23,303 bases of DNA from Salpingoeca rosetta. Its lineage: Eukaryota > Protista > Choanoflagellata. The first letter of the stretch is position 1; each line of letters begins with the position of its first letter. A program made the position numbers and the translations under genes. The notes beneath the pieces were generated by a model. That model saw only the letters and a list, made by a program, of their open reading frames with translations. It was not told the DNA's origin and ran no database searches. Positions 181 to 21,650 of this stretch are shown here, one piece after another. The stretch spans positions 189,150 through 212,452 of the forward strand of contig JAWQFM010000023.1 in NCBI GenBank assembly GCA_033442325.1. Direction: 5' to 3'.

Positions 181-2484
<2,304 letters not shown>

Positions 2485-2950
2485 GAGCATTCACGACTGA
2501 TGCAATATGACGTTGTTGTCACATGTGACACTTTGGCAACAACAAACAACAACGCCATCTCACAGGCCAGCCCCCCCCCACACCTTAGAACCACAACACA
2601 CAACTACATCACTCCACACTTCCTCTTTCCTCCATCCCCTCAGTCCTCAGCTTGCACCACGCTGTCAAGTACACACGAGTTGATTGCGTTCAAGCAGCAG
2701 GTGTTCCCTGTTTGAATATTTCATGTACTTTTGGAAGTTGTGGTAACTGACTGACCCACTCGGGGAACACGTAGACAACTGCACGTAGACAGACACAAAT
2801 TAAAAGTCAAATCAGGCACAGGGACACATGCATAAGGAAGGTCGCACGCGGGCAGTGGTTGTGCACACATGTTGTCCTCGCATGACGATTTCTGGAACGC
2901 GTGACAGCAGGGCCAAACACCCAAAACGACTGTTGCATGGGCGTGGTCGT

Positions 2951-4060
2951 TCAAAGTCCCATCAGCAACTGGATTGGACAAAAGCGAGCAACAAACAGCG
3001 TCAAACGTGAGATGGTTGGGGTGGATGCCTTCAATATACACACAGGCAGACACACCGACACCCACACCCACACGTACAGACACACGTACAGACGCAGACA
3101 CAGACACGCCCCTCCCCCCCCCCCAAAACACACACACACACACACATAGCAAGCTCACCTCAAAGCCTTCGTCGTCATTTGGATCTGTAAAGTCCACGTC
3201 GTGCGTGTCCTCTGAAGGCTTTTTCTTCTGCATGTATTCCTTAATCTCTTCAAGCGAGAACAGCTCCTTATCCTCCTCATCATCTTTGTCTTTCGTCTCC
3301 TTCCGCTCTTCCTTCTTCACCTGTTCTGCCTTCTTTCCTGCGTCTTTGGTCTTCTTGTCCTTCGGGGTTGTTGTCGCCGCCGCTGGCTTCGCTGTTGTGG
3401 CAGCTGGTTTGGTAGCTGTTGCCGGCTTTGCGTTGGCTGCGGGCGCTGCTGCTTTCTTGGCAGCAGGGGCCGCCTTGGTTGTCGCTGTCGTGGACACCGC
3501 TGCCTTTTTCTTCTTGGCTACTGCAGCGGTTGTGGATGGTTTTGATGCAGTTGCTGGCGTGCGCTGCGGTGGCTTCGCGGTGCTGGCATTCACAGCTTGT
3601 GCCGCCGTCGTCTTCTTCTTTGTCGACACGGCTGCTGCTGCTGTCGTTGCGGGTGCCGTTGCGGGTGCCTTTGCCTTCGACACAACAGCGGGCTTCCCTG
3701 CGCTGCTCGGCCTGCGAACACCGGCTTTGGTTGGCGCTGGCTTTGCAGCAGCAGCCGTGTTGCTTGCCGCCGTAGCCACCGCCTTCTTCTTGGTCGTCTT
3801 CGCTGGCTTGGTTGTCGTGGTCGTGGTCGTGGTCGCGGTGGACGGTGTTGTTGTCTTTGTAGCTGTCGCTGCTGGTGCTTTTGCTGGTGCCTTCTTGCCA
3901 GCGGTGGCAGCGGTGGTTGCAATCTTCTTTTTCACAACCGCCGCAGCGCCGGCTGTTGTTGTTGGCGTTGCTGCTGTGCTTGTGCCCTTGACTGGGGCTG
4001 TTTGCTGCTTAGGGGTCGTCGTCGTTGTCGTCGTTGACGCTCGCTTCGCCTTCGTCTTCG

Positions 4061-4095
<35 letters not shown>

Positions 4096-5652
4096 GGTTG
4101 CGGTTTGGTCGCCGCCACCACCGGCTTAGTCGATGCTGATGCTTTGCTCGTTGCAGCAGGCGCCGCTGTCGTTGGAGTTGGCGTTGGCGTTTTGGCAGGG
4201 GTTGTTTCCTTCTTCTTCAGGGTTTGCAAAGTCGGTGTCGTCGTCGTCGTCGATGTCGTCGTCGTCGTCGGCGTCGCTGGCTTGGCTGTTGAAGGTCGCT
4301 TTGCCGACGCCTTTGCCTTTTTTGTCATGGGCTCGGTTTTTGCTGGCGCGGTGACTGCTGTTTTGGGTGACTTGATTGGCTGCTCCTTCTTGATATCTGC
4401 GAGGCGCTTGATCGTGAACACTGGCGCTGGTGCTGGTGTTGACGTTGTTGCGACCTTTGCCTTCTTCGCTGCCACCGCTTCGCCACCCGCTGTTGACGCT
4501 GATGACGGCGTGCCAGACACCCGCCGCTTCGGGCTCGTTCGGCCACCAGCTTTACCTGCTGCTGACGCCACTGCTGCTGTCGTCGTTGCCGTCGTCGTTG
4601 CCGTCGTCGTCGTCGTCGCTGAACCTGCTGCCTTTGTAGCTACCGCCGCCGCTGTTGCAGTGGAGGAGGAGGAGGAGGAGGAGGCCTTGGCAGCACCATT
4701 TTTGGACTGGCGGATGCGGGAGAGGGGAAGAACCTCAAAGGTCGCACCACCACCACCACTGCCGCTGCTGCTGGCGGCAGGGCTGGTCGTAGTCTTCTGG
4801 CCAGTAGCAGCCAGCTTCTGCGCAACCTGCTGCTGCTGCTGTTGCTTGTTGCGCTTGGGGACAGGTGGCATGATGAGCTTGGCACGCTTTGCAGCATTGT
4901 CTGCATCTGTGCCAGTGCCGTCTGCGCCGCCGCTGCCGGTGTTCTTGTTCTTGGTCGGCGCTGTCTTGCTGCTGGGGTCGGCCTTGGCCACGGCTGGGCC
5001 AGATGTTGCTCGCGTGAACAGGAGTTGCGCACCCGCACTCTTCTTCCCCTGCCTACCGCCAGCACTGCCCCTCCTAGCTGCTGCCGCTCCTGCAGTTATT
5101 CCAGCCGTTGTTGCTGGTGTCGCCTTTGCAGCTGCCGCATTGGGCTTCTTGGTTGTCGGAGCAGCGGCCTTGGTATTGCTGCCACCGGGCACCTTAACAC
5201 CCTCCAGCCGCGCGTGCACCGGTACCTTCTTCTTGGTCGTTGATGCCGCTGCCGCCGCTGCTGCGGGTGCGTGTGTCGTTTCCTTGCGTACGTTCACGTT
5301 CTTTGGCTTGGCCGCCCCATCCAACTGCTGCTGCTGCTGCTGCTGCTTCATCTTGTGCTGTTCCTTGGCCTTCTTCTGCTTGAGCTTGGCCTTGAGCTGC
5401 TCCCGCATGCGCGCCTCAGAGCGCGAAATCACATTCACAGAAGACGATGATGATGGCGCTGATGATGATGTTGTTGGGGGTGGCGGCATGCGAGCAGACG
5501 GCGCATGGGCTGGGCGATGTTGCGGGTGTTGCTGATGTTGCATCAGGCCGGGATTGCGGCCCATCATGGTGACATGACCAACATTGCCAGGGCCACCACC
5601 GACAGGACCGTTTGCCATCATCCCAATGCCACGCCCAGCCATCATCCCACGC

Positions 5653-5700
<48 letters not shown>

Positions 5701-7948
5701 ATCATCATCGTTGGCATCGTTGGTCCTCGCGGCCCGTAGCTGCCCATGCCCATGCCAATACCCATGCGCATGTGTTGGGGCGGCATTGCTGTCCCCGCCG
5801 CCGCCGCTGTTGTGGGCGGACGCGGGCGCGACACGGGGGCAAACCTGCCCATTGGCGGCGATGTGGGCGTTGTTGTGGCTGTGACTGGTGTTGCGTGTGG
5901 TGTTGGCAGGGCCGAGTAGGGCGGCGCATTCATCGTCGTTGCCGGAGCTGGTGGACGGCCCATGAGGCCCGGGCGAAACTGCCGCTGCGGGGACACAGGG
6001 CCGGGCGTTGGTTGTGGGCCATAAGGCATGCCACGCGCCCCGGCTGGCGGTTGCTGGTGAGGTCCACGGGAGGGCGATGGCATCAGGCCAAACAGCGGCG
6101 CTGACGATGATGATGACGACGAAGATGACGATGGTGGTGCAGAGAATGGTGGTGGCGCAGCCGCCCTTGTTGTCGGTACCAATCTCGACGTCATCGTTGT
6201 CGGTGTGTGTTGAGTGTTGGCACCTGTGGAGGCGAGCTTGAATAGAGGAGTTGACGAGGATGACTTGGCAGGTGTGGTAGTTGTCGGTGGCTTTGTTGTG
6301 TTGAGGGGCCTCTTGTTGCCGATTGCTGGTGTTGCCATTGTTGTCGATGGGCGTTTGGGGCCGCTCACGGAGAAAGGGGCTCTGTTCTTGTGTCTGAAAG
6401 GGCAGTTTGGCTTGGTACATCCGCCCGGCTGTGTTTCCCAGTAGCAAGGCACAGTGCTGCGGTCCTTGGTGTCCTCAAAGTGCCTCAGTTTACAGCCGGG
6501 GTTGGTGCACTCGCCGTTCTTCCAGTGCGGGCAGACAATGTTTGTCTTGAGGGCCGCTTCCGAGTGTCGGAAGGGGCATGCCGCGCCCTGTGTTGCGACG
6601 AAAGAAGAGACAATGGACGAGACGTCGTTAACGAAGGGGCCGGTGGGCGTTGTCGTCGGTCAGGTTGTTCAGGTTGTGATTCGGGTTGGTGGAAGATGAC
6701 GAGGGTGATGGAGGGCGTGCCGAGTCCCGGAGAAGGGGTCGCGGGAACCAGAAGAAGTTCAGTTCAGGGGGAGAGGGGCACGCGAAGTTGCATCGTCATC
6801 ATGAGTGGAAGATGGATGGATGTTGGTTGAATCGGAATGAAAGAGTGGAGAGGGTGGAGACGACCGCGATCATGACGATGACTGTGTCACTGCCCATGAA
6901 GCTGATGTCGAGTGGATGACGCGATTGCACGCCCCAAGGTCAAGGGCTGACGAGCACAAGGCAAGAGACGACAGAGAAGAGAGGTGGTGGGGCGGAGGGG
7001 TGTGTGCGTGTGTGGACCACAGCCACTGCGCTGTTTTGTGTCCACCATGCAGACGGACAGCACACATGGGAAACTGGAATACAACGTTGTTGGTTGGGTG
7101 TGACCAACAGAGCAACGCACACTCTCCAGCAGGATGTGGGACAGACGTGCAGCCAACAGAAAGGGAGCATAGGGCGAGGCTGGCTCTGGTGATCAAGACC
7201 ACCAGAACCTGATGGGGAAGGGCAGAACACAGACGACATGAAAGGGACGGGCGGGGGAGAGGAAGCAACTCGAGGAAAAAAAAAGACAAACACGTTACAG
7301 CGCGTGCGCGTGTGTGTGTTTGCGTGTATTTGCGCAAGTTTGGGTGTTGGCCTTGGCACTTGTCGTGCAATGGCAATGGTGGGGGTGGAGGTGCTTCTTG
7401 TTGTGGCGTGTTTGCTTCTTGTTGTGGTGTGTTTGCTTCTTGTTGTGTCTGGGTGCTGTGGGGTGTGGGGTGTGGACCGGCCGAGGTGACATGGACACGG
7501 CTGCCAAGGCACACGGAGGGCACGTCACTCAACACAACACGGAGCACAGGAGACACAAGCCGCTTCCCCATCACCTTGCGCCCTCGCCCCGCGACAAACG
7601 AGCAGATTGACGAACAGATAGAGAGAGAGAAAGGGAGAGAGGGAGAGAGAGGAAAGCGACGGTAGGAAAGGGAGCCTCGAAGGAGGGGAGAAAGGTGGGA
7701 AGGCAAGGTGCACACAGACACACACAGACACACACAGACACACACAGACACACAGACACACAGACACACAGACAAACACAGACAAACAAACACAAACACA
7801 AGCACAGACACAAACCGACATACAAGCAAGGGCTCGCGAGTTCAACTAACAAGGGGGTTGTTTTCTAATTCACTCATACGCCAGGCTACCCTACCTTTGA
7901 GCAAGTTGAGAACAGGAAGAACCTGCAGTCTGTGTTGCTGCTGGCCAT
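2951..7948 (-). CDS. ZC3H11A: ZC3H11A-like triple CCCH zinc-finger RNA-binding protein (~1166 aa) with a long disordered Q/P/T/A/K-rich region
   Basis: Exons (minus) 7948-7895, 6587-3159, 2968-2951. N-terminus MASSNTDCRFFLFSTCSK|GAACPFRHSEAALKTNIVCPHWKNGECTNPGCKLRHFEDTKDRSTVPCYWETQPGGCTKPNCPFRH mirrors the ZC3H11A N-terminus ([24 protein letters not shown]...IPCYWENQPTGC, recalled). The last mini-exon (LLMGL*) is the least certain part. Confidence 0.88.
7390..7447. repeat. Short tandem repeat, 21-bp period (GTGTTTGCTTCTTGTTGTGGY), ~3 copies
   Basis: TGCTTCTTGTTGTG recurs three times at 21-bp spacing in intron 1 of the ZC3H11A-like gene. Confidence 0.8.
7711..7820. repeat. (CACAGA)-type compound microsatellite
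   Basis: Visible repeats in ZC3H11A-like intron 1. Confidence 0.85.
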
Positions 7949-8301: not shown

Positions 8302-9384
8302 TTAGAACGGCTGGTTGTTGAGGAAGCGCTTGAACATGGTCAAGGCTTGGGCTGTTGTTTGGGGTTGGGGCAAGAAGGAGAAAGGTGAGAGGTAAATGTG
8401 ACCACGGCGAATGCTCCATGAGATCCAACAGACACATGAGCACATACACAGACACACACACACACACAGACAGACAGACACACAGACAGACAGACAGACA
8501 CACACACACACACACAGACAGACACACAGACAGACAGACACACACACACACACACAGACAGACAGGCACACACACACACAGACAGACAGACAGACACACA
8601 GACAGACAGATACACACACACAGACAGACAGACAGACACACACACACATGAACGCACACCCCACACACAACATATACACACACAGACATAGTGACTGACC
8701 TGGTTTGTGCTGTGGCACAAGGTGGCCGGCGCCAGAGACGGTGAGGAAGGTGAAGTTGTGCTGGCCAGCGTTGTATGTGGTGACGTAGCCAGCCTGGATC
8801 TCCTGGTTTGGCTCGTCCGAGCTTGGGCTGGTCCACGGGCGCCAGGCCTCCTTCTCCGGGAAGCCGAGCTCGCGGGTCCACTCCTCAGAGCCCCAGTAGG
8901 GCACGCAGGCGTCGACCGAGCCAGAGTAGATGAGGATGCGGTACTTCTGTGCCAGCGTCTTGTAGAGCGGGCGCAGGTCGGCGGCGGTGCGGCGGTACTG
9001 CTGGCGGCCCTGGTGGTCAACGTGCAGAGCCTTCTGCACATCGGGCTTGGACAGCCACATGCCCATCACCTTCTCCGCGCCGCACGCGTAGTCGTTGAGG
9101 GCGCCGGCAACGCCCTTCTGCAGCTGCGGGTGCACGGCAAACGCCTGGGAGCCGGTTGTGGTGAACTCGCGTGCCTCGCGCAGCTGGCGGTAGATGTCAG
9201 ACACCCTGGTGGTAGTGAAATAAGTGTGTGTGTGGGGGGGGGAGGGAAGGGCATGCAAACAGGGGAGCGTAGAGAGGGAGCGGTGAGCGGTGTAAGGCGA
9301 GAAGAGGAGAACAACTTCAGCATGGCAGAGAAAAGGGAGACAGACGCAGAGGAAATCTGAGACAAGAGAGAGAGAGAGGCGGGT

Positions 9385-9471
<87 letters not shown>

Positions 9472-11242
9472 TACGTGACTTGGTCGCTGCCACACTGGTC
9501 GTAGACGTTGTAGATGTCAAAGTTGCCAATCTTGCGGTTCATCTCGGAGAGGGCGGCGCGGCACTGTTGCGTCTCCTTGGTGAAGTTGCCGCAGGCATCC
9601 TTGATCTTGGGGTACAGGGTCTGCGGGTACATGCCGTGGCCGTAGTAGAACTCCACAGCAATGCGGTCAGCCTGGTTCTGGAAGCCGCACGTCGACACCT
9701 CGTTACCGATGCAGCCATCGCCAATCGCAGCACCCTATTCGCGCGGGTGTATGTCGAAGAGATGGCGGTGAGGCAAAGGCAAAGTGGGCATGCAGTCAAG
9801 CAAGGAGCAGATGCAAACATGCAGGGGCGACCGACACGATGGTGAGAGCAGCATATCAGTCCCAACAGACCTTGAGGTTCAGGTTACCGCGGGCATCCAC
9901 GGCCTTGAGAATCTCGGGAATGTAGATACCGGCATACGACTCGCCTGCGAACACACACGCATGCGATGGGGTGTGTGAGCGAGGACCATGAAACGAAGAA
10001 GGGAAACGGGCTCGTGTGCACACAAAAATGGATCACACATGATGCTCACGCGTGTGCAGACAAAGCTGGAGACATAAGCGCATAGACACAACCAGGCAGA
10101 CACGTAGACAGACACACACACACATAGACAGACAGACACACACACACACACAAACACATACACAGACAGACACACGTACCGGTGATGTAGAAGTCGTTCT
10201 TCTTGTACTCGGAGAAGCCGTTGAAGAAGCCGTCGAGGAAATCGGCAAACTCCTCGCCAACGCTCTCGTCCGTGTTGACGCAGTCAACGCCCTCGGCGCA
10301 GTAGCTGAAGCCAACGCCCTTGGGCTGCTCGACGTACAGCATGTTGGCGATGGTGCTCCAGGAGTATGGGTTGTAGAGCAGGGTGATGTTGCCGTGCTCG
10401 TCAAGGCTGTTGTCGTTGGTCTGGAACTGGCCATTCTCCTGTTAAGGGGGAGGGAGGGGGAGGTGACAAAACAAACCAACGCAGGTGAAACACAAACGAA
10501 GCGTGAGCGTGAGCGTGTGTATGTGTGTGTATGTGTGTGCGCGTGCGTGTGGTACGTGTGTTGTTGCTGCGGGTGTTGTTGTTGTATGTATGTGTGTGTG
10601 TGTGCTACGTGTGTAGGTGCTATTGTTGGCTTGGACGTTTCCGCAATCGATAACCACCACAAGACATCATGCACACACACACACACATACCGTGAGGAGG
10701 CCAACGAGAGAGGAGGAACCGGGGCCTGTGAAATCGCCAGATCGAGTGTGGACGAGGACGTGAGAATGCAGCAAAGCGAACGAGCGTGGCATGCGTGCAT
10801 GGGTTGGTGTGTTGGGCGTGTATGGGGAAAGTGAAAAAGAGATGCAACAGGGACAAGTGCATGTTGTACGCGTGCGTGTGTCTGCGTGTGCGTGTGTCTG
10901 TGGTTGTGTGTGTGTGTGTGTCTGTTTGTTTTGGCTTTGCATGTGCGCCTGTGTGTGCGTGTGTGTCTGCATGCCTTTGTCATGCATGAGCAATACTCAC
11001 CGCCATTGAGCCAGACGACGACAGGGGCGGTGGATGGGTTCTTCTCGGACTCAATGAACCAGTAATGGAGGAAACCCTTGCCGTTTCCAACAGGGAGATA
11101 GCCGGAGTAGTGCTTGGAAGGAAGTGCCTTGTCCCAGCCTGGGTAATGTGTGAGCAAGCAAGTGTCGTGCGCAGGGCGTGTGTGCATGTCCAGATGAGAC
11201 GGGGAGGGAGAGAGAGTGTGTGTGTGAGAGAGAGGGGGGGGG

Positions 11243-11304
<62 letters not shown>

Positions 11305-11517
11305 CACAGAAACACCGACACACAGACACACAGACACACAGACACACAGACACACAGACACACAGACACACAGACATACAGACACACAGACACACAGACA
11401 CACACGCAGACATCCACCCGTACCTGGGAGGGAGGTCACTTGATCCTTGGTGATGGCTGCGTTGCAGGTGGCCGCCACAAGGGCGAGCACAAGCGCAGTT
11501 GCCAAAACAAACCTCAT
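8302..11517 (-). CDS. Serine carboxypeptidase, peptidase family S10 (cathepsin A/SCPL-like), signal peptide, ~471 aa
   Basis: Exons (minus) 11517-11424, 11138-11001, 10725-10691, 10438-10180, 9944-9871, 9734-9475, 9205-8700, 8351-8302, all phase-consistent. Motifs: signal MRFVLATALVLALVAATCNA, HYSGYL, WLNGGPGSSS, ENG, NPYSW, MLYVEQPKGVGFSY, GESYAG (catalytic Ser), YSGSVDACVP (Asp), GAGHLVP (His). Confidence 0.96.
8441..8648. repeat. (CA)n/(CAGA)n compound microsatellite
   Basis: Visible, in the last intron of the carboxypeptidase. Confidence 0.9.
9386..9467. repeat. Perfect (CA)n microsatellite, ~40 units
   Basis: Uninterrupted run next to the donor at 9474 (minus strand). Confidence 0.95.
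11246..11405. repeat. (GA)n plus (CACAGACA)n microsatellites
   Basis: Visible, in carboxypeptidase intron 1. Confidence 0.9.
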
Positions 11518-11624
11518 CTTCGATCGCAGGTGGTTCAGTGGCAGCAACAGTCTGGAGGGAAATGGAGGGAAAGTGCCGAGTCAGCACAAATCAATCAACA
11601 TCGGCGACAGCGACAGACAGTGAC
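11518..11624. promoter_or_regulatory. Putative bidirectional promoter/5' UTR region
   Basis: Only 107 bp separate the divergent start codons of the carboxypeptidase (11517) and ALKBH4 (11625). Confidence 0.6.
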
Positions 11625-15040: not shown

Positions 15041-16720
15041 TTAGATGGTGAGCAGGAGGACAACGTCTTCCTCGCGCATGGCAATCTCTGCGGGCTGCAG
15101 GCTGTGCCGCTCAAGGGCGAGGGCCAGGTCCTGGTTGCTGGCAATGGCGTTGCGGATGGTGTCGTTGGCAACCGCCATGATGCGGGCCGTGATGGCCTTC
15201 TTCACCGCAGGCAGGTCGCGGTACGACACGAGCGGCAGGTTCACCGCGTGCAGGTGGCCGGCAACGCGCAGGAAGCGGATCCTAAACGGCACCTGCGGCG
15301 CGCCAGCTTCCCCAGCACCGAGGCCACGCGCAGCTGACGACCCCGCCGCCAGAGAGGAAGAGGAGGAGGACGAGGACGAGGACACATCCATTGGCGCACT
15401 GCCCTGTTGATTTGCAGCTGTTGCTGGTGTTGGTGTTGTTGTTGTTGTTGTTGCTCCTGCTGTCGCTGATGGAGCAGCTGGCACTTCTTCAACGGCCGGC
15501 GCTGGCGGTGCACGCAACGATGATGACGACGACGACACCGGCAGCGCGCCCGACTTGTGCAGCGGTGACCCCGGCACGGGCGTCAGCGACACAGACCCGC
15601 GCTCCTGCTCCGGCTTGGGCTCCGGCTGTGGCTGTGACGATGAAGAAGCAGAGGTGGGCATTGTTGTCGGCATTGCCGCCGTCGTCGAAGTTGTTGCTGT
15701 TGTCATCATTGTGGGTGGCGCGGGAGTTGGCGGGTGCGTCGCAGCAGCGGTGACGGCGGCGTATGCGACCTGCTGGATCTCCGAGGTGGGGACGTAGCTC
15801 ATCACGCCGTTGCACACAACACGGCACCAATCTGAAGCAGCAAGAGAAGCACACGCGGCGCGTTTTGTGAGTTTTGAGTGTGACAGCATGGGGGTACCAT
15901 CACAATGAGCCGCACATTGCAAAGAACCACCCGACGCAAACAGCCAAACATCAAACATCAAGCTCTACAGCTCACACCAAGCACACCACACACACCAAAG
16001 ACAACCACGACCAAAACTAGTAGGACAGGTGCAGTGAGTCTGGACGGATTTCCCAATCACAGCAACAAAGCGAGACAAGAGGCGAAAACGCACCAATCTG
16101 GAGCCACAAATCAAGGAGCCGACAGACAGTTGGGTCCTTTGTACGCGCGGTCCACTCGGCCTCCATCTCCGCCCGGATGCGCACGCGCGTGGCCAGGTCC
16201 GTCGCCTGCGCAGGCTGACGCGCCTTTGTCTCGAACACAGGAATGACTGATTTTGTGAGATGCGTTTTGCGGCAGGCGTTGCACAGCATAAACTTGTGGC
16301 GCATGCCTACGGCATAGCGTTCCTCCAGCTCCTTGGTCTTCCAGCACCCAAGGCAGAAGCCTGGTGCCGCAAAAACGTGGGGCAAAATAGGGGAGGAAAG
16401 GCGGGCCACAAAACAAAACAAATCATGAGCGTGAGTAAGTGAACGATTGAGAGGTAGCGTTTTGGGGGAGGGGGTGGAGGTGGCGTTGCGCTCTCCAGTA
16501 AGAGTGCAAGGTGGGCGTGTTCAAGAGCAACAACAACAACAAGCATAACAACAACAAGAGCAACAACAACAACAAGCATAACAACAACAAGAGCAACAAC
16601 AACAACAACAACAACAAGCATAACAACAACAAGAGCAACAACAACAACAACAACAACAACAAGAGCAACAACAAGAGCAACAACAACAACAACAACAACA
16701 ACAAGAGCAACAACAAGAGC

Positions 16721-16779
<59 letters not shown>

Positions 16780-19150
16780 CGCCGACGAAATAAGGTCGTA
16801 CCTCGTGTGGACTGGCGCTTTTGCCCCCGTCGGGTGGTCTTGCCACTCCCAGGCGTGCCTGTGCTACTGCTGCTGCTGGCGGCGGCGGTGGCGGCGGCGG
16901 TGGCTGCTGCGCGGCCTGCGGTGCTGTGCTTCATCACAGACGATGGAGTGCCTGCAAAGGGGGCGGTGGCGGGCTTGGTGGCCGTGGATGGCTGTGTGGA
17001 TGAAGACTGCATCCCAGCAAGCATATGCGCCACATTCACTTCCTCAGACGAGTGCTGCATATTTTGTTGGTGGCTCTGCTGCTGCATATTTTGCTGCTGC
17101 TGCTGCTGCTGGTGCTGGTGGTGCTGTGGGGTGAGGTGCTGCTCGTGCTTGATTGGAACATGCATGCTCGGCCGGAACATGCTCGGTTGTTGCGGCGGCT
17201 GCTGCTGTTGCTGTACTTGCGGGAGGAACCGCGGGCGCATGCCGTACAAGCCTGGCATGTGCTGCTGGTGGTGCTGCTGCATGAAGGGCGACTGCTGGCT
17301 CCCCGGTGCATGCGGGATCAGGCCAACAGGCGCCTGCGCATGCGCGTGTGCGGACGGGTACATGGCAAATGCGGTGCGCTGCTGTGTCGGCGCAACCCGC
17401 GGCACAAACCCTTGTGGCGGCGTCTGCTTCTGTTGCAGCTGTTGCAGCTGCTGCTTCGCTGGTAGCTGGTGGCGCGGTGGTGCGGTGGGTGCGACAGGCG
17501 GCGCTCGTGCCGGTGCCTTGCGGCCACTTTCGCTCTCACTGTCACTATCGCTGCTACTGCTGCTATCACTGCTGCCGCTGCTGTCATCGCTTGATGCGGA
17601 TGATGAGGAAGATGACGAGGATGAGGAAGACGATGATGCGCGATGGCGAGTGTGGCTGTGGCTGCGGCTGCGATGGGACGCCTTGCTGCCGCCAACACGG
17701 CTGCTATGGCCGCGGATCTCTGCCTCGTCGTCATCGTCGTCCCCGACCTCGTCGTCGCTGCCACTGCGGCTGCGGCTGCGGCTGCCGTCGCCCTGCTTGC
17801 TGTCTGTGTCGCTCACGTAGGACGAGCTGCGCCTCTGTTGTCCGCGTTGTGGCTCCTCAGCGGCCTTGGCGCCCGTGCTGGTGCTGTTAGCGGTCACGTC
17901 CCCGCCTTCACCACCACCACCACCACCACCAGCAATGGCACCGGCAGAGACGCTGGCAGAGCGGCGTCTGTCGTGTTTGTGCTTCCTGTGCTTCTTGTTG
18001 GCCTTTTTCGTCTTCTTCTGCACCTTCTTTTTGCTCGCCTTGTCCTTGTCCTTGTGCTTGTGCTTGAGTGTGCCGGGCGCTGGGGTTGATTGGGACGGCA
18101 GCTCTGCCGCTGGCTGCTGCACGCCGCTGATGCCTGCGTGCGCGGTTACGCCCGGGCCCGTAACACCGGCCGACGGTTGTTGCGCAACGGTGCTCATCTG
18201 CATCTGTTGGCTGTGCCCCTTCTTCTTCCTGCTGGGGCTGCTGCTGTTGTCTGCGCTCTCGTGGTCGTGGTCGTCGTGGTCATGGTCGTGGTGGTGGTGG
18301 TGCCTGTGCCTGTGCTTGTGTCTGGATGAGGGGGAGGATGAGGCGTGGCGGTGGTGCTTTTTTGCGTGCTTGCGCTTGCGCTGCGGGGATTTCATGGCGG
18401 ATGGTGACGGGGCGGCTGGCGCACCTTCCGCTGCACCCACAGGCATGGAGGTGGTACCAGTGGTGGTGGGTGTGGTTGCCGGGGTGGCGGCGGCTGTGGT
18501 GGTTGCAGCGGCCATGGCAGAGGAAGAGGAGGATGCCATCTTGCCTTGATTTGCCGCCACAGGCTGTTGTTGCTGCTGGGAGGAGGGTGTGGCCGCTGGC
18601 ATGGCTGATGACGACATGGCGGAGGGCGTGGTGACAGGCACGGCCTCCGTGTCCGGCTCGAGCTTTGGCTTCTTCTGCTGGCCGGTGGTATCAGGGAAGG
18701 CGTCCGCGATAGAGCGCGTGTGCCGTATCCCCACATCCAAACACCGCTGGTACAAGCAGCCAAAGCAGTGGCGGACGCTGAGCAGGCCTTGGGATAGCAA
18801 GCACGCGGGCGGCGCGGCGTGCGTGCGGTAGGTGGGGTGATCAATTGCTGTCAGAAAAAACTTGATGCAGTAGGTGCACACGTATTCCTTCTCAGGTGCA
18901 CAGCTTTCCATTTCGCTGCGGTCATACTCCATAGCACATGCGCCACACCGTAACCTGACGGGCGGCGGGCCCTGCTGTTGTGGGTGCTGCGGGTGCTGCA
19001 TCCGCATGCCTGGCTGGTGTGACATGAGCTGGTGCTGCTGGTTGGTCTTAGGGGGACCTGAAAAGCTAGACGCGTGTCCGGACATGGCCTGGCACGTTGG
19101 TAGCGGCGGCGGCGGCGGTGCTGCTGCTACTGTTGTTTGGACCGCCGAGC
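15041..19150 (-). CDS. Uncharacterised multi-zinc-finger protein, probably nuclear (NR-DBD-like finger pair, GATA-like finger, C-terminal globular domain), ~1113-1158 aa
   Basis: Exons (minus) 19150 (or ATG 19085)-16802, 16360-16094, 15831-15041, joined by two phase-1 GT-AG introns that keep the frame. TAA at 15043-15041. Acceptor with a branch-like CTGAC at 19153-19151. Contains Cys-rich domains, K/H/R basic tracts, and S/D- and Q/P-rich regions. Confidence 0.85.
16272..16355 (-). other. GATA-like C4 zinc finger CX2CX20CX2C
   Basis: CLGC-WKTKELEERYAVGMRHKFML-CNAC. LCNAC is the GATA hallmark, but the TPxWR and following GL motifs are absent. Confidence 0.5.
16523..16780. repeat. (AAC)n compound microsatellite with AAGAGC/AAGCAT interruptions, intronic
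   Basis: ~258 bp inside intron 16361-16801. It explains the poly-N/L/V/C ORFs in the track. Confidence 0.95.
18726..18947 (-). other. Nuclear-receptor-DBD-like double zinc finger (74 aa)
   Basis: CGAC-x19-CTYCIKFF; 15 aa after CTYC comes H-x5-C-x11-CFGCLYQRCLDVGI. The canonical NR pattern is C-x2-C-x13-C-x2-C-x15-C-x5-C-x9-C-x2-C-x4-C-x3-GM. Confidence 0.6.
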
Positions 19151-21580
19151 CTGGTGTCAGAAGCAACCAGTCAAAACAAAGTCAGCGAGGCGGACACGAG
19201 GTCCAGGTGTTTTGGGGAGAGGTGGGTGGGTAGGGTGAGCGAGCAGCTGAGAGAGAGAGAGAGAGACTTGGAAACAAAACGGAGAATGGGAGGGGGGATG
19301 TGTGGAAGTGTGTGTGTGTGTGTGGGGGGGGCAGAGGTAGCCCCCGAAGAAGTGAAGAGAACAGGCAGAGGGAGAAAGGAAGTCGCTGGCGTTGTCGACA
19401 AAACACAAACAAACAAACACACAAAACAAAGGGGGTGGGATGGGAAAGTGTGGACAAGACAAGACTTCAGAAGTCACAAAGAAGACAAAGAAGAGGTCGG
19501 TCAGGTGCAAGGGTGACCAAGAGGGAGAAAACAAACCAAACAAGCGGAGCGCGAGAGCAATGGGTGGGTGGACAACACCCCTTGCAGAAACTCGACACAG
19601 TCGCTCACAAGACTGAAAGGAAGGGCACAAGAAGGTAAGGCGGCTGCTTGCTGGTGAGGGGGTTGGTGTTGCTGGTGGTGCGTGGTGCTGTGTTGTTCCT
19701 ACGGGGAAACAAAAGCTCAAGTTGCGGATGGGAGACGGGCTGCTTGTGTGCTGTGAGTGAGGGTGGGCTGGGTTTGCTGTGTGCGTGAAATGAAGAGGCG
19801 GAAACGGCCGGTTGCTGGTGGTGCGATCGATCGATCGATCTTGGAGACTCTCTCGACGATGACAAATGAGCAATAAAAGAGCCGGTATTGCGTGGTTGCC
19901 GAAGCGGATAAAGAACGCCAACACACACCCAACAAAGAAAACAAAGAAAGAAAGAAAGCATGTCATGTGACGAGACGGTGCAAGACACAAACCCACATGG
20001 GGGGGGAGGTGGATGGCCGGAAGCGAAAGACGGTGGATGCAACAGGGCGCAATTTCAAGGCAACGCCAGTGTTCTCAGAACAATGTGTTACAATACAAAC
20101 AACAACGGCCACGCGTGCATATGTGGTGGTTGGTTGCTGTGCGGCATTCGGAACCCCTTTGAAACGGAGGACGCAGCCGTGTGCGGAGAGAACGAAACAC
20201 ACAACCACAAGAATGTGCGTGCGCGCGCGTGTGTGTGTGGTGGTGGGTAGGTTGGACATTGCATTCCGCCACACCCAAGCAAGCTGGTTGTGTGTGTGCT
20301 TCTTGCCGCAAAGCCGGGTGCGGTTGCAGCAACGCAACACACACACACACACATGCACACACACACATGCACACATGCACCGTGCACGCCAATCAAAGAC
20401 ACAAGCGGCCGAACGCAGATGCAAGAGGAAGAAGAAGGTCAAGTGGGACGAAGGGTTTGGTTGGCTGGTTGGTGGGTGGCGTAGCCCGCCCAGAAAAGCC
20501 ACAAACGCACTCACACACGCACACACATACGCCGAAGGTTCTCGACAAGTATGTGAGAACAGAAGAGGCACGAAGGCCTGGAGGGAGAGACGCGGAGACA
20601 GAGAGAGACGTGGCAAGCAAGCGCGTGCCATATCTGGCAGGATGACATCAACGGCATGCATAGTTGCGTGTGTGTGTGTGTGTGTTTGGGCGTGTGTGTC
20701 GTGGTTGGCAGCCAGCCAGAAATAATTCAGAAAAAGGGGACAGTCGGAAGTGTCGAAGCACTTGGACTTGAAGAAAATTAAATAAAGACTTAGGGGAAAC
20801 ACCGGCTACGAGGCACCGAACACAAGGCGGCGTTGCGGGTGTTGGTGGCCAGTTGCTGATGGTGTGTTGGTGGTGTTGACCCACCAGCGACCACGCCTTG
20901 ATGGCTTGCATGCATGCAGCAGGCCAGCGGACGGGCAACACAACACACTCAAAAGCAAGCGCGACCACCACGCACGCGCACTCAAAACTTACAAGCAGAC
21001 ATCGGAGCAGGCAAGTCTTAAGCGCGTGATGGTGCGTGTGCGTGCGCGCGTGTGAACGGAGAGGGAACAAACCAACAAAGCCACTGGCTGGGTGCTTGAA
21101 GCAACAAACCAAGCACAAGCACAAGCAACAAAGCGTGACGTTTGTTGGTGGCTTGATGTGACATGACGTCACAACCAACGAAGGTCAGCAGCCACTGACG
21201 CGTGGCTTGGTCACAGGAGGAGGAGGAGAAGGGACAAACTGTGTTCGATCAAACACGCGATGCAACACACTGGACGCAAAAGAGGAGGGGAAGAAGACAA
21301 AGGGCGGAGAAGAGACGCATTGCTGCTCATCGTCTCTGCGAAGGAGCTCATCAGTGAGCTCCGGTGGTGTTGCTGATGGCGTGATAATTGCTGCTGGTGT
21401 GGCTGGGAGTTGCTGCTGCAGTTGGAGATATCACGAACAGAGGAGGGCGGGGGGGGGCAGAGGAAGGGGAGAAGAGGAGAGAAAGATGGAAAGAGGTACA
21501 GAGAGGGAAGGGGGAGGAGAGAGGGAGAGGAGCGAGGTTGTGGTAACAGGGAGGAGCGATCATTGCAACGCTGTACGTAC

Positions 21581-21650
21581 CGTGTGGCTGAGATGGCTTG
21601 TCAAAGTGAGACAAGCCTTGCATGTCTCGCCCTGCAAGCCGCATGTCCAT
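21581..21650 (-). CDS. Candidate first coding exon of the zinc-finger gene (MDMRLAGRDMQGLSHFDKPSQPH-G)
   Basis: ATG at 21650 and a phase-1 donor G|GTACGT at 21580, which matches the phase-1 acceptor at 19151. No homology support. Confidence 0.4.

What the first reader, a model, noticed from the sequence alone, without database searches (positions are those of the whole stretch)
18726..18947. Nuclear-receptor-type DNA-binding-domain-like double zinc finger in an apparently non-animal genome
Seen: CGACAMEYDRSEMESCAPEKEYVCTYCIKFFLTAIDHPTYRTHAAPPACLLSQGLLSVRHCFGCLYQRCLDVGI. Compared with an RXR-type DBD recalled from memory (CAIC-x13[49 protein letters not shown]), it shares Y-x-CxxCxxFF and the exact 15-aa spacer (containing TY) to the fifth ligand, which is His here instead of Cys. 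It also shares the exact 5-aa D-box spacer followed by CL, and the terminal CxxCxYQ[RK]CLxxG[IM]. Differences: loops of 19 vs 13 and 11 vs 9 aa, and loss of the P-box E/K and basic recognition-helix residues, so DNA specificity is probably different or lost. Established: nuclear receptors are regarded as animal-specific and absent from choanoflagellates. Inference: if the host is a unicellular holozoan, this may be a pre-metazoan relative of the NR DBD fold that standard thresholds miss.
Basis: partly seen in the sequence, partly recalled or inferred. Interest (0 to 1): 0.92.

Follow-up and report, generated by a model that had tools for sequence, protein, structure and literature searches.

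The report
Choanoflagellate nuclear-receptor-like zinc domain
An expressed gene of the choanoflagellate Salpingoeca rosetta begins with a conserved two-zinc domain that weakly matches, and is predicted to fold like, the DNA-binding domain of animal nuclear hormone receptors. This gives a concrete, testable example for earlier reports that this "animal" domain is older than animals.

Summary
It forms residues 47-120 of an RNA-supported, annotated 1113-aa protein with three coding exons and no Pfam hit. The genome is Salpingoeca rosetta, not an animal. Orthologues were found only in choanoflagellates (S. infusionum, Choanoeca perplexa, C. flexa and two environmental fragments). They conserve exactly the residues needed for two zinc sites, C4 then HC3, plus the ninth Cys, the FF pair and a C-x-G-C-L-[YF]-Q-R-C motif.

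Sequence links to the nuclear-receptor DNA-binding domain (zf-C4) recur but all fall below threshold: Pfam gives 16.9-20.4 bits against a cut-off of 21.1, and the best PDB profile E-value is 0.026. An AlphaFold model matches nuclear-receptor DBDs clearly better than any other solved fold: Z 5.2-6.7 for the top 11, next a RING at 3.6. The basic DNA-reading residues are absent, there is no ligand-binding domain, and the most conserved part of the protein is a separate central finger.

The premise is dated: zf-C4 alone was reported in choanoflagellates in 2019. This scan also noted a different 8-Cys receptor-like family elsewhere in this genome, which I did not test. Verdict: a new variant of a known kind, of moderate interest.

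The parts
18726..18947 (-). Nuclear-receptor-DBD-like two-zinc domain (residues 47-120 of the 1113-aa protein). Proposed Zn1 ligand codons: Cys 18947-18945, Cys 18938-18936, Cys 18878-18876, Cys 18869-18867. Proposed Zn2 ligand codons: His 18821-18819, Cys 18803-18801, Cys 18767-18765, Cys 18758-18756. Conserved ninth Cys: 18743-18741.
   Evidence: Translation. Invariant columns in 5 sequences. Pfam zf-C4 below threshold. AlphaFold model with pLDDT 81.8. Best structural matches are nuclear-receptor DBDs.
16802..19085 (-). Coding exon 1. It runs from the first in-frame ATG (19085) through the zinc domain and a roughly 650-aa low-complexity linker rich in His/Lys, Ser/Asp and Gln, with a conserved short motif near its end.
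   Evidence: ORF. Continuous RNA-seq depth. Splice model. NCBI gene model of 1113 aa at this place.
16361..16801 (-). Intron 1 (GT..AG on the minus strand), containing a long (GTT)n microsatellite.
   Evidence: RNA depth is about 0. Loose ends at 16366 continue at 16808. The 2011 contig joins the two exons with one mismatch, which fits the canonical GT..AG placement.
16094..16360 (-). Coding exon 2: a central C4 finger (CxxC-x20-CxxC, with C-N-A-C) followed by conserved helices. This is the best-conserved part of the family (82% mean column identity).
   Evidence: There is no Pfam hit, GATA included.
15832..16093 (-). Intron 2 (GT..AG on the minus strand).
   Evidence: Joint supported by 76 and 225 RNA-seq reads and by one contig.
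15041..15831 (-). Coding exon 3, with the stop codon at 15043-15041: a disordered Thr/Ser/Pro stretch, then a conserved C-terminal alpha/beta domain (R-V-A-G-H-L-H motif). No match to a nuclear-receptor ligand-binding domain.
   Evidence: AlphaFold pLDDT 78. Foldseek finds nothing at E<1 and the best VIA Z is 5.1 without a gap to the rows below.
19086..19300 (-). 5' untranslated region. A splice acceptor at 19151/19150 is used by alternative upstream exons that end at about 19609 and about 21582.
   Evidence: RNA depth reaches about 19300-19368. Loose ends at 19150/19151 map to 19609-19638 and 21582-21611, each next to a GT donor.

Best explanation
The segment encodes the N-terminal domain of a single-copy, expressed gene that has so far been found only in choanoflagellates (Salpingoeca rosetta, 1113 aa). 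The domain is a divergent relative of the nuclear-receptor DNA-binding domain (zf-C4, the 'double treble clef'). Two zinc ions are held one after the other, not cross-braced. Zn1 is bound by C47, C50, C70 and C73. Zn2 is bound by H89, C95, C107 and C110. Each CxxC knuckle caps an alpha-helix, and the FF pair and the L-Y-Q-R-C segment pack the two helices together as in receptors. Shown here: the residues and their conservation, expression, gene structure, and the predicted fold with its best matches. Inferred: zinc binding, which residues are the ligands, and shared ancestry with the animal domain. The Lys and Lys-Arg residues that read DNA in receptors are replaced by hydrophobic or neutral residues, and the domain is not basic. 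It therefore probably does not read hexameric half-sites as receptors do. It more likely serves as a structural or partner-binding module, or as a nucleic-acid-binding module with other rules. The rest of the protein looks nuclear and regulatory. Its most constrained part is a separate central C4 finger with helices, and it has no ligand-binding domain.
For: Conservation: 16 invariant columns include all eight proposed ligands that can be scored, plus the ninth Cys. Pfam: zf-C4 is the only family hit by more than one member, with the window at 17.2-17.6 bits (E 0.0055-0.0074), S. infusionum at 16.9 and an environmental fragment at 20.4 (E 7e-4). Family profile against PDB sequences: 33 of 35 hits are receptor DBDs, best E 0.026, and the alignment places the His exactly on the fifth Cys and the next Cys on the sixth. 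Single sequences give the same picture: 12 of 19, 17 of 19 and 1 of 1 hits are receptor DBDs. Language-model features: the nearest clusters are zf-C4 for three members, with scores 0.90, 0.84 and 0.79. AlphaFold on the 5-sequence alignment gives pLDDT 81.8 and pTM 0.74, with helices starting at the two CxxC knuckles. Foldseek against PDB: 49 of the top 50 are receptor DBDs, probability up to 0.99. An unbiased VIA-align pass over 48,161 chains puts receptor DBDs in ranks 1-11 (Z 5.2-6.7, 70-84 residues aligned), and the next row is a RING at Z 3.6. The same search on the C-terminal model gives no such gap. The gene is native: it has spliceosomal introns, is expressed, is single-copy, lies in S. 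rosetta and has choanoflagellate orthologues.
Against: No sequence test is significant. All Pfam scores are under the 21.1-bit cut-off. In a six-frame search of the genome the hit has E 0.46, and a spurious segment scores higher at 24.1 bits. The two Choanoeca members give no Pfam hit, and the only PDB hit of C. perplexa is a Not4 RING at E 0.48. Foldseek E-values are only 0.02-0.09, TM-scores are 0.45-0.64 and rmsd is 3-4.5 A. Only one of the five AlphaFold models is confident (81.8, 69.7, 48.9, 47.1, 42.9) on a 5-row alignment, and AlphaFold may simply recall the receptor fold from the Cys pattern. A shape search of the ESM Atlas returned RING/IBR models at TM 0.42-0.51 and no zf-C4 row. Loop lengths differ from receptors (19 against 13, 11 against 9), and one ligand is His. 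The domain is near neutral, with pI 6.2-8.9 and K+R about equal to D+E.
Confidence: 0.6

Rival explanations
1. It is a conserved two-zinc module of independent origin: RING/IBR-like, or a fold of its own. On this reading the likeness to the receptor DBD comes from shared Cys spacing, short motifs and AlphaFold's recall of a familiar pattern. It would act as a protein-interaction domain.
For: All sequence scores are below threshold, and genome-wide E is 0.46. The ESM Atlas shape search lists only RING/IBR/RBR families at TM 0.42-0.51. One member hits RING zf-C3HC4_3 at E 0.043, and C. perplexa hits a Not4 RING at E 0.48. Only one confident AlphaFold model out of five. No basic recognition helix.
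Against: The ligand spacing does not fit the RING or IBR consensus: there are 15 residues between ligands 4 and 5, and 5 between ligands 5 and 6. It fits the receptor order, with two lengthened loops. In the PDB the RING and RBR chains score Z 2.5-3.6, against 5.2-6.7 for receptor DBDs. The RING Pfam hit covers only the first half of the domain, in one member. Three diverged members independently point to zf-C4 by features.
Confidence: 0.28
2. It is a working receptor-type DNA-binding domain. On this reading it recognises specific DNA sites through the helix after the first CxxC knuckle, making the protein a DBD-only transcription factor like the animal DBD-only receptors.
For: Predicted receptor-like fold. 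The protein has Lys/Arg/His clusters that look like nuclear-localisation signals and Gln-rich tracts typical of transcription factors. A second zinc finger sits in the same protein.
Against: The residues at the positions of the invariant receptor Lys and Lys-Arg are I/V/F/L and L-T, V-R, A-N, I-R or V-V in the five members, and no basic residue is conserved in that helix. Net charge is about zero. That receptors need these residues for DNA contact rests on my own knowledge of receptor-DNA structures.
Confidence: 0.1
3. The sequence is of animal origin, either contamination or a recent transfer of a degenerate nuclear-receptor gene, so it says nothing about pre-animal history.
For: None found. 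It was considered only because the domain is otherwise typical of animals.
Against: A neighbouring gene is 98% identical to S. rosetta PTSG_12946 and 70% identical to Monosiga brevicollis. The locus is in the NCBI S. rosetta assembly with the same 1113-aa model. All 20 indexed runs that hold the stretch, from six studies, carry the same species label. Orthologues with the same three-domain architecture occur in three other choanoflagellates. No animal protein was found at E<=0.001 among 1.8 billion representatives.
Confidence: 0.02

Closest known systems
Nuclear-receptor DNA-binding domain (Pfam PF00105 zf-C4, double treble clef)
   Same: It has eight ligands in sequential order. The spacings CxxC, 15 residues, 5 residues and CxxC-x4-C are identical. 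The FF pair follows the first knuckle. A [YF]-Q-[RK]-C-L-x-x-G-type motif follows the second knuckle (the receptor side of this motif is shown by the PDB alignments). The predicted fold matches receptor DBDs best.
   Different: The fifth ligand is His. Loops are 19 and 11 residues instead of 13 and 9. P-box and basic recognition-helix residues are absent, and the domain is not basic. It sits at the N-terminus with no ligand-binding domain. It scores below the Pfam cut-off.
zf-C4-only proteins reported in choanoflagellates (Lopez-Escardo et al. 2019, PMC6792448; cited in PMC8092661)
   Same: A receptor-type DBD without the hormone-receptor domain, in choanoflagellates. The conclusion is the same: the DBD predates animals.
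   Different: That report rests on Pfamscan hits (Pfam 29) and names no proteins or species in the text or supplement held here. The family studied here fails the current Pfam cut-off in every member, so it may or may not be the same set of proteins.
RING / IBR (RBR) zinc domains
   Same: Two zinc sites in about 60-80 residues. They are the nearest shapes in the ESM Atlas search and rank 12 and below in the PDB search.
   Different: The RING cross-brace spacing is not met. Z is 2.5-3.6 against 5.2-6.7 for receptor DBDs. Pfam RING hits are weak, partial and limited to one member.
Animal DBD-only nuclear receptors (e.g. Knirps, ODR-7; from my own knowledge, not tested here)
   Same: A receptor-type zinc domain near the N-terminus with no ligand-binding domain.
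   Different: Those are canonical all-Cys, basic, DNA-binding domains derived from full receptors within animals. This one is pre-animal or parallel, carries a His ligand and is not basic.
GATA-type C4 finger (for the central exon-2 finger)
   Same: CxxC ... C-N-A-C in a single finger followed by basic residues.
   Different: The loop is 20 residues rather than 17-18. There is no Pfam GATA hit even at E<=10, and the AlphaFold confidence is low there.

Membership tests
Nuclear-receptor DBD (PF00105 zf-C4) | Score at or above Pfam's gathering cut-off (21.1 bits) | tested here: not met
   Window 17.2-17.6 bits, S. infusionum 16.9, environmental fragment 20.4, and the two Choanoeca members give no hit. 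Genome-wide six-frame E is 0.46.
Nuclear-receptor DBD (PF00105 zf-C4) | Eight Cys ligands with the spacing C-x2-C-x13-C-x2-C-x15-C-x5-C-x9-C-x2-C (spacing as shown by the PDB alignments) | tested here: not met
   Order, number and four of the six spacings agree (x2, x2 with x15, x5, x2 with x4-C). But the fifth ligand is His and two loops are 19 and 11 residues. This pattern is conserved in the orthologues.
Nuclear-receptor DBD (PF00105 zf-C4) | Fold: two sequential zinc modules, each knuckle capping a helix, with the helices packed against each other | tested here: met
   Prediction only. AlphaFold pLDDT is 81.8, with helices at 33-44 and 70-79. Of the Foldseek top 50, 49 are receptor DBDs. 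VIA-align wide ranks 1-11 are receptor DBDs at Z 5.2-6.7, and the next fold scores 3.6. Caveats: a shallow alignment, one confident model of five, and the Atlas shape search gives RING/IBR.
Nuclear-receptor DBD (PF00105 zf-C4) | Conserved basic residues of the recognition helix (Lys after the knuckle, Lys-Arg after FF) and a basic domain overall | tested here: not met
   These positions are hydrophobic or neutral and not conserved. The domain has pI 6.2-8.9 and K+R is about equal to D+E.
Nuclear-receptor DBD (PF00105 zf-C4) | Binds two Zn(II) ions and specific DNA | not testable with these tools
   This needs metal analysis and DNA-binding assays on recombinant protein.
Nuclear receptor (full receptor: DBD plus ligand-binding domain PF00104) | A C-terminal ligand-binding domain | tested here: not met
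   No Pfam hit on the full-length orthologues or on the C-terminal pieces. The C-terminal model has no receptor-LBD match by Foldseek or VIA-align.
RING / IBR zinc fingers | Cross-brace ligand spacing (C-x2-C ... C-x1-3-H-x2-3-C-x2-C ... C-x2-C; consensus from my own knowledge) and a profile match | tested here: not met
   There are 15 and 5 residues where RING has 2-3 and 2. zf-C3HC4_3 gives E 0.043 in one member, over the first half only. PDB RING/RBR chains score Z 2.5-3.6.
GATA zinc finger (central finger of the same protein) | Pfam GATA match and a C-x2-C-x17-18-C-x2-C spacing (spacing from my own knowledge) | tested here: not met
   The loop is 20 residues and there is no Pfam hit at E<=10 for four family members.

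The most novel reading that the evidence does not exclude
This single-copy choanoflagellate family may be a surviving pre-animal lineage of the nuclear-receptor DNA-binding domain, and the one that still shows residual sequence similarity to it. If so, the double-treble-clef module existed in a non-receptor protein before it was fused to a ligand-binding domain on the animal stem. That ancestral module may have been non-basic, with a C4 plus HC3 ligand set, and may not have bound DNA. The origin of nuclear receptors could then be tested directly in the genetically tractable Salpingoeca rosetta.
Probability: 0.4. Interest if true: 0.75.

Novelty: new variant of a known kind. Interest (0 to 1): 0.55.

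Why it matters
Nuclear receptors are a hallmark animal transcription-factor class, and where their two domains came from is unsettled. The literature already states, from Pfam hits alone, that the DBD occurs by itself in some choanoflagellates. It names no protein, structure or function.

This locus supplies a concrete case in the main choanoflagellate laboratory model:
- a defined, expressed, single-copy gene;
- a conserved ligand set, C4 then HC3;
- a predicted receptor-like fold;
- an architecture with no ligand-binding domain.

It also suggests that the pre-animal form lacked the DNA-reading residues. If that holds, DNA recognition by this fold would be a later gain, or was lost in this lineage. 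Metal analysis, a structure, DNA-binding assays and a knock-out could settle each of these points.

Tried and rejected
- Plus-strand reading: it gives an unrelated peptide with a stop.
- Second zf-C4 hit in the genome (contig C31, 24.1 bits, above the cut-off): rejected as spurious because it has no CxxC pairs and lies in a low-complexity frame.
- Weak hit of the family profile on contig C5: rejected, because it contains a stop codon and has no Cys pattern.
- Word-based search of the 881-aa frame, region 50-170: nothing found.
- P0004 from the exhaustive search: a C2H2 zinc-finger false positive.
- DUF7836 hit (E 0.0043, first half of the domain, window sequence only): not shared by the relatives, so not pursued.
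- Metagenome scan with the N-terminal alignment: no relatives.
- Metagenome scan with the central domain: one Choanoeca-like contig (L006) and one spurious locus (L007).
- A non-canonical CA..GG reading of intron 1: rejected in favour of GT..AG six bases away, which fits the single mismatch in the RNA contig and gives R-G-F-C as in C. perplexa (P0005).
- Ligand-binding-domain hypothesis for the C-terminal region: no support.
- GATA membership of the central finger: no support.
- Supplement of the 2019 paper: it holds no zf-C4 entry, so the reported proteins could not be identified.
- Profile-profile comparison with a receptor DBD alignment: not run, because no receptor sequences were available by reference and I did not type any in.
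- The separate 8-Cys family noted by earlier scan reports: could not be located, so its relationship to this domain is untested.
Full report
**Observation.** The plus strand of 18726-18947 gives an unrelated peptide with a stop. They lie near the start of an 881-codon open frame, 19166-16521(-).
- CxxC, then 19 residues;
- Y-V-C-T-Y-C-I-K-F-F, then 15 residues to a His;
- 5 residues to a Cys, then 11 residues;
- C-F-G-C-L-Y-Q-R-C-L-D-V-G-I.

**Organism.**
- The assembly has 55.4 Mb in 68 contigs. The published Salpingoeca rosetta genome is 55 Mb (abstract of PMC4054682).
- A serine carboxypeptidase exon in the same window is 98% identical to NCBI PTSG_12946 of S. rosetta. The next named relative is Monosiga brevicollis at 70%.
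- The NCBI S. rosetta assembly (GCA_000188695.1, GL832984.1) carries, at the place of this gene, a 1113-residue gene model with no Pfam hit on record.
- The host is therefore a choanoflagellate, not an animal.

**Gene and expression.**
- Two stranded RNA-seq runs of 2026 cover the domain at depths of 33-35 and 313-379, with almost nothing on the other strand. A 2011 contig spans it as well.
- Reads and contigs define intron 2 (15832-16093, GT..AG on the minus strand) and a junction from exon 2 to about 16808.
- The exact-match reading of that junction would be non-canonical. A GT..AG intron at 16801-16361 fits the single mismatch in the contig and yields R-G-F-C-L-G-C-W as in C. perplexa (P0005).
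- From the first in-frame ATG (19085) to the stop (15043-15041) the product is 1113 aa, equal to the NCBI model.
- The zinc domain is residues 47-120.
- It is followed by about 650 residues of low complexity: His/Lys clusters, Ser/Asp runs and Gln tracts.
- Next comes a central C4 finger with helices on its own exon, then a disordered stretch, then a C-terminal alpha/beta domain.
- Alternative 5' exons near 19609 and 21582 splice to an acceptor at 19150/19151.

**Relatives.**
- An exhaustive HMMER pass over 1.84 billion representatives found three true relatives and one C2H2 false positive. A word-based search added a fourth relative.
- The relatives are Salpingoeca infusionum (593 aa, E 2.6e-22), Choanoeca flexa (463 aa), Choanoeca perplexa (471 aa) and a 242-aa fragment from a public run.
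- A metagenome contig (L006) is a further Choanoeca-like member.
- No animal or other protein reached E 0.001. The gene is single-copy in its genome.
- All full-length members share the order: N-terminal zinc domain, linker, central finger, C-terminal domain.
- In the N-terminal domain the invariant columns are C9, C32, C35, F38, A42, H51, C57, L64, S65, C69, G71, C72, L73, Q75, R76 and C77. C12 is present wherever the sequence reaches it.
- That is exactly one C4 site, one HC3 site and a ninth Cys. The other Cys and His residues of the window sequence are not conserved.

**Is it a nuclear-receptor-type domain? Sequence evidence recurs but is never significant.**
- Pfam zf-C4 scores against a cut-off of 21.1 bits:

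| Member | Bits | E-value |
|---|---|---|
| Window (S. rosetta) | 17.2-17.6 | 0.0055-0.0074 |
| S. infusionum | 16.9 | 0.0091 |
| Environmental fragment | 20.4 | 7e-4 |
| C. perplexa, C. flexa | no hit | - |

- In a six-frame search of the whole genome the window hit has E 0.46. A segment on another contig that is plainly not a zinc finger scores 24.1 bits. The single score alone therefore proves nothing.
- Against PDB sequences, the family profile returns 35 hits at E<=10. Of these, 33 are receptor DBDs, the best being VDR at E 0.026. The alignments put the conserved His on the fifth Cys and the next Cys on the sixth.
- Single sequences behave alike for three of the four members tried. C. perplexa instead finds only a Not4 RING at E 0.48.
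- Language-model features put zf-C4 clusters first for three members: 0.90, 0.84 and 0.79. Only the first reaches the tool's lead level.

**Fold evidence.**
- AlphaFold on the five-row alignment gives pLDDT 81.8 and pTM 0.74, with helices beginning at each CxxC knuckle. Only the top model of the five is confident.
- Foldseek against the PDB lists receptor DBDs in 49 of the top 50 rows (probability up to 0.99, E 0.02-0.09, TM 0.45-0.64).
- VIA-align gives Z 6.1-6.9 over 70-81 residues.
- A pass that does not depend on Foldseek, over 48,161 representative chains, puts receptor DBDs in ranks 1-11 (Z 5.2-6.7). It then drops to a RING at 3.6 and to ZZ, FYVE and other RING chains below 3.3.
- As a control, the C-terminal model shows no such gap: best Z 5.1, then a smooth decline.
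- Against this, a shape search of the ESM Atlas returns RING/IBR models at TM 0.42-0.51 and no zf-C4 row.
- The ligand spacing does not fit RING or IBR, but fits the receptor order with two longer loops.
- I put the receptor-like fold at about 0.7 and shared ancestry at about 0.5.

**Function.**
- At the positions of the receptor Lys after the first knuckle and the Lys-Arg after FF, the five members carry I/V/F/I/L and L-T, V-R, A-N, I-R, V-V. No basic residue is conserved in that helix.
- The domain has pI 6.2-8.9, with as many acidic as basic residues. Reading DNA half-sites as receptors do is therefore unlikely.
- The central finger region is far better conserved than the N-terminal domain: 82% against 51% mean column identity. 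It has no Pfam match, GATA included.
- The C-terminal region folds with pLDDT 78 but matches nothing solved, and is not a receptor ligand-binding domain.
- The basic clusters and Gln tracts suggest a nuclear regulatory protein. This is inference.

**What is known.**
- Lopez-Escardo et al. 2019 reported the zf-C4 domain alone in choanoflagellate proteins, using Pfamscan with Pfam 29. They concluded that the DBD predates animals while full receptors remain animal-specific (PMC6792448).
- Beinsteiner et al. 2021 repeat this (PMC8092661).
- Neither names proteins. The supplement held here has no zf-C4 entry. I therefore cannot tell whether this family is what they saw, and every member fails today's cut-off.
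- Earlier notes of this scan describe a different family in the same genome: at least 13 genes with a C-terminal 8-Cys domain, said to fold like the receptor DBD but to have no sequence link. I could not locate or test these genes. My family profile finds nothing else in the genome.

**Verdict.** I class it as a new variant of a known kind, a His-containing, non-basic, N-terminal receptor-like domain in a choanoflagellate-specific protein. Interest is moderate, because it gives a defined and experimentally tractable locus.

Noticed in passing
window 16094-16360 (-): The central exon encodes a C4 finger (CxxC-x20-C-N-A-C) plus helices. At 82% mean column identity across choanoflagellates it is the most constrained part of the protein, and it matches no Pfam family.
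   Followed up: partly
window about 17000-17040 (-), within exon 1: A short motif in the disordered linker, [VA]-A-[HQE]-[MVL]-L-[AVM]-[GS]-[ML] (here V-A-H-M-L-A-G-M), is kept in all family members. It may be a docking helix.
   Followed up: no
window 16361-16801 (-): Intron 1 carries a long (GTT)n microsatellite. In the exon-1 frame it reads as a poly-Cys tail, which makes the raw ORF look longer than the real exon.
   Followed up: yes
window 19150-19151, 19609-19660, 21582-21640 (-): Alternative upstream 5' exons splice into the leader. The distal one carries an in-frame ATG that would add about 36 residues to the N-terminus. Few reads support it.
   Followed up: partly
L001 1501-1662 (G000 contig C31:210311-210472): A six-frame segment scores 24.1 bits on zf-C4, above Pfam's cut-off, yet has no CxxC pairs. 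It is a false positive, and it shows that the cut-off is not safe on raw six-frame translations.
   Followed up: yes
L006 1-330 (metagenome contig Ga0307933_1052726): A Choanoeca-like environmental member of the family has a GT..AG intron inside the zinc domain, between C-S-G and C-L-Y-Q-R-C. S. rosetta has no intron there.
   Followed up: partly
window 849-2510 (+), 2721-6452 (-), 8302-11547 (-): The neighbouring genes are a DEAD_2/Helicase_C_2 helicase, a long low-complexity protein with a weak zf-CCCH_3 match, and the S10 serine carboxypeptidase PTSG_12946, which is split by introns.
   Followed up: partly
window 15044-15340 (-): The conserved C-terminal alpha/beta domain (R-V-A-G-H-L-H motif) has a confident predicted fold but no Pfam or PDB match.
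   Followed up: partly
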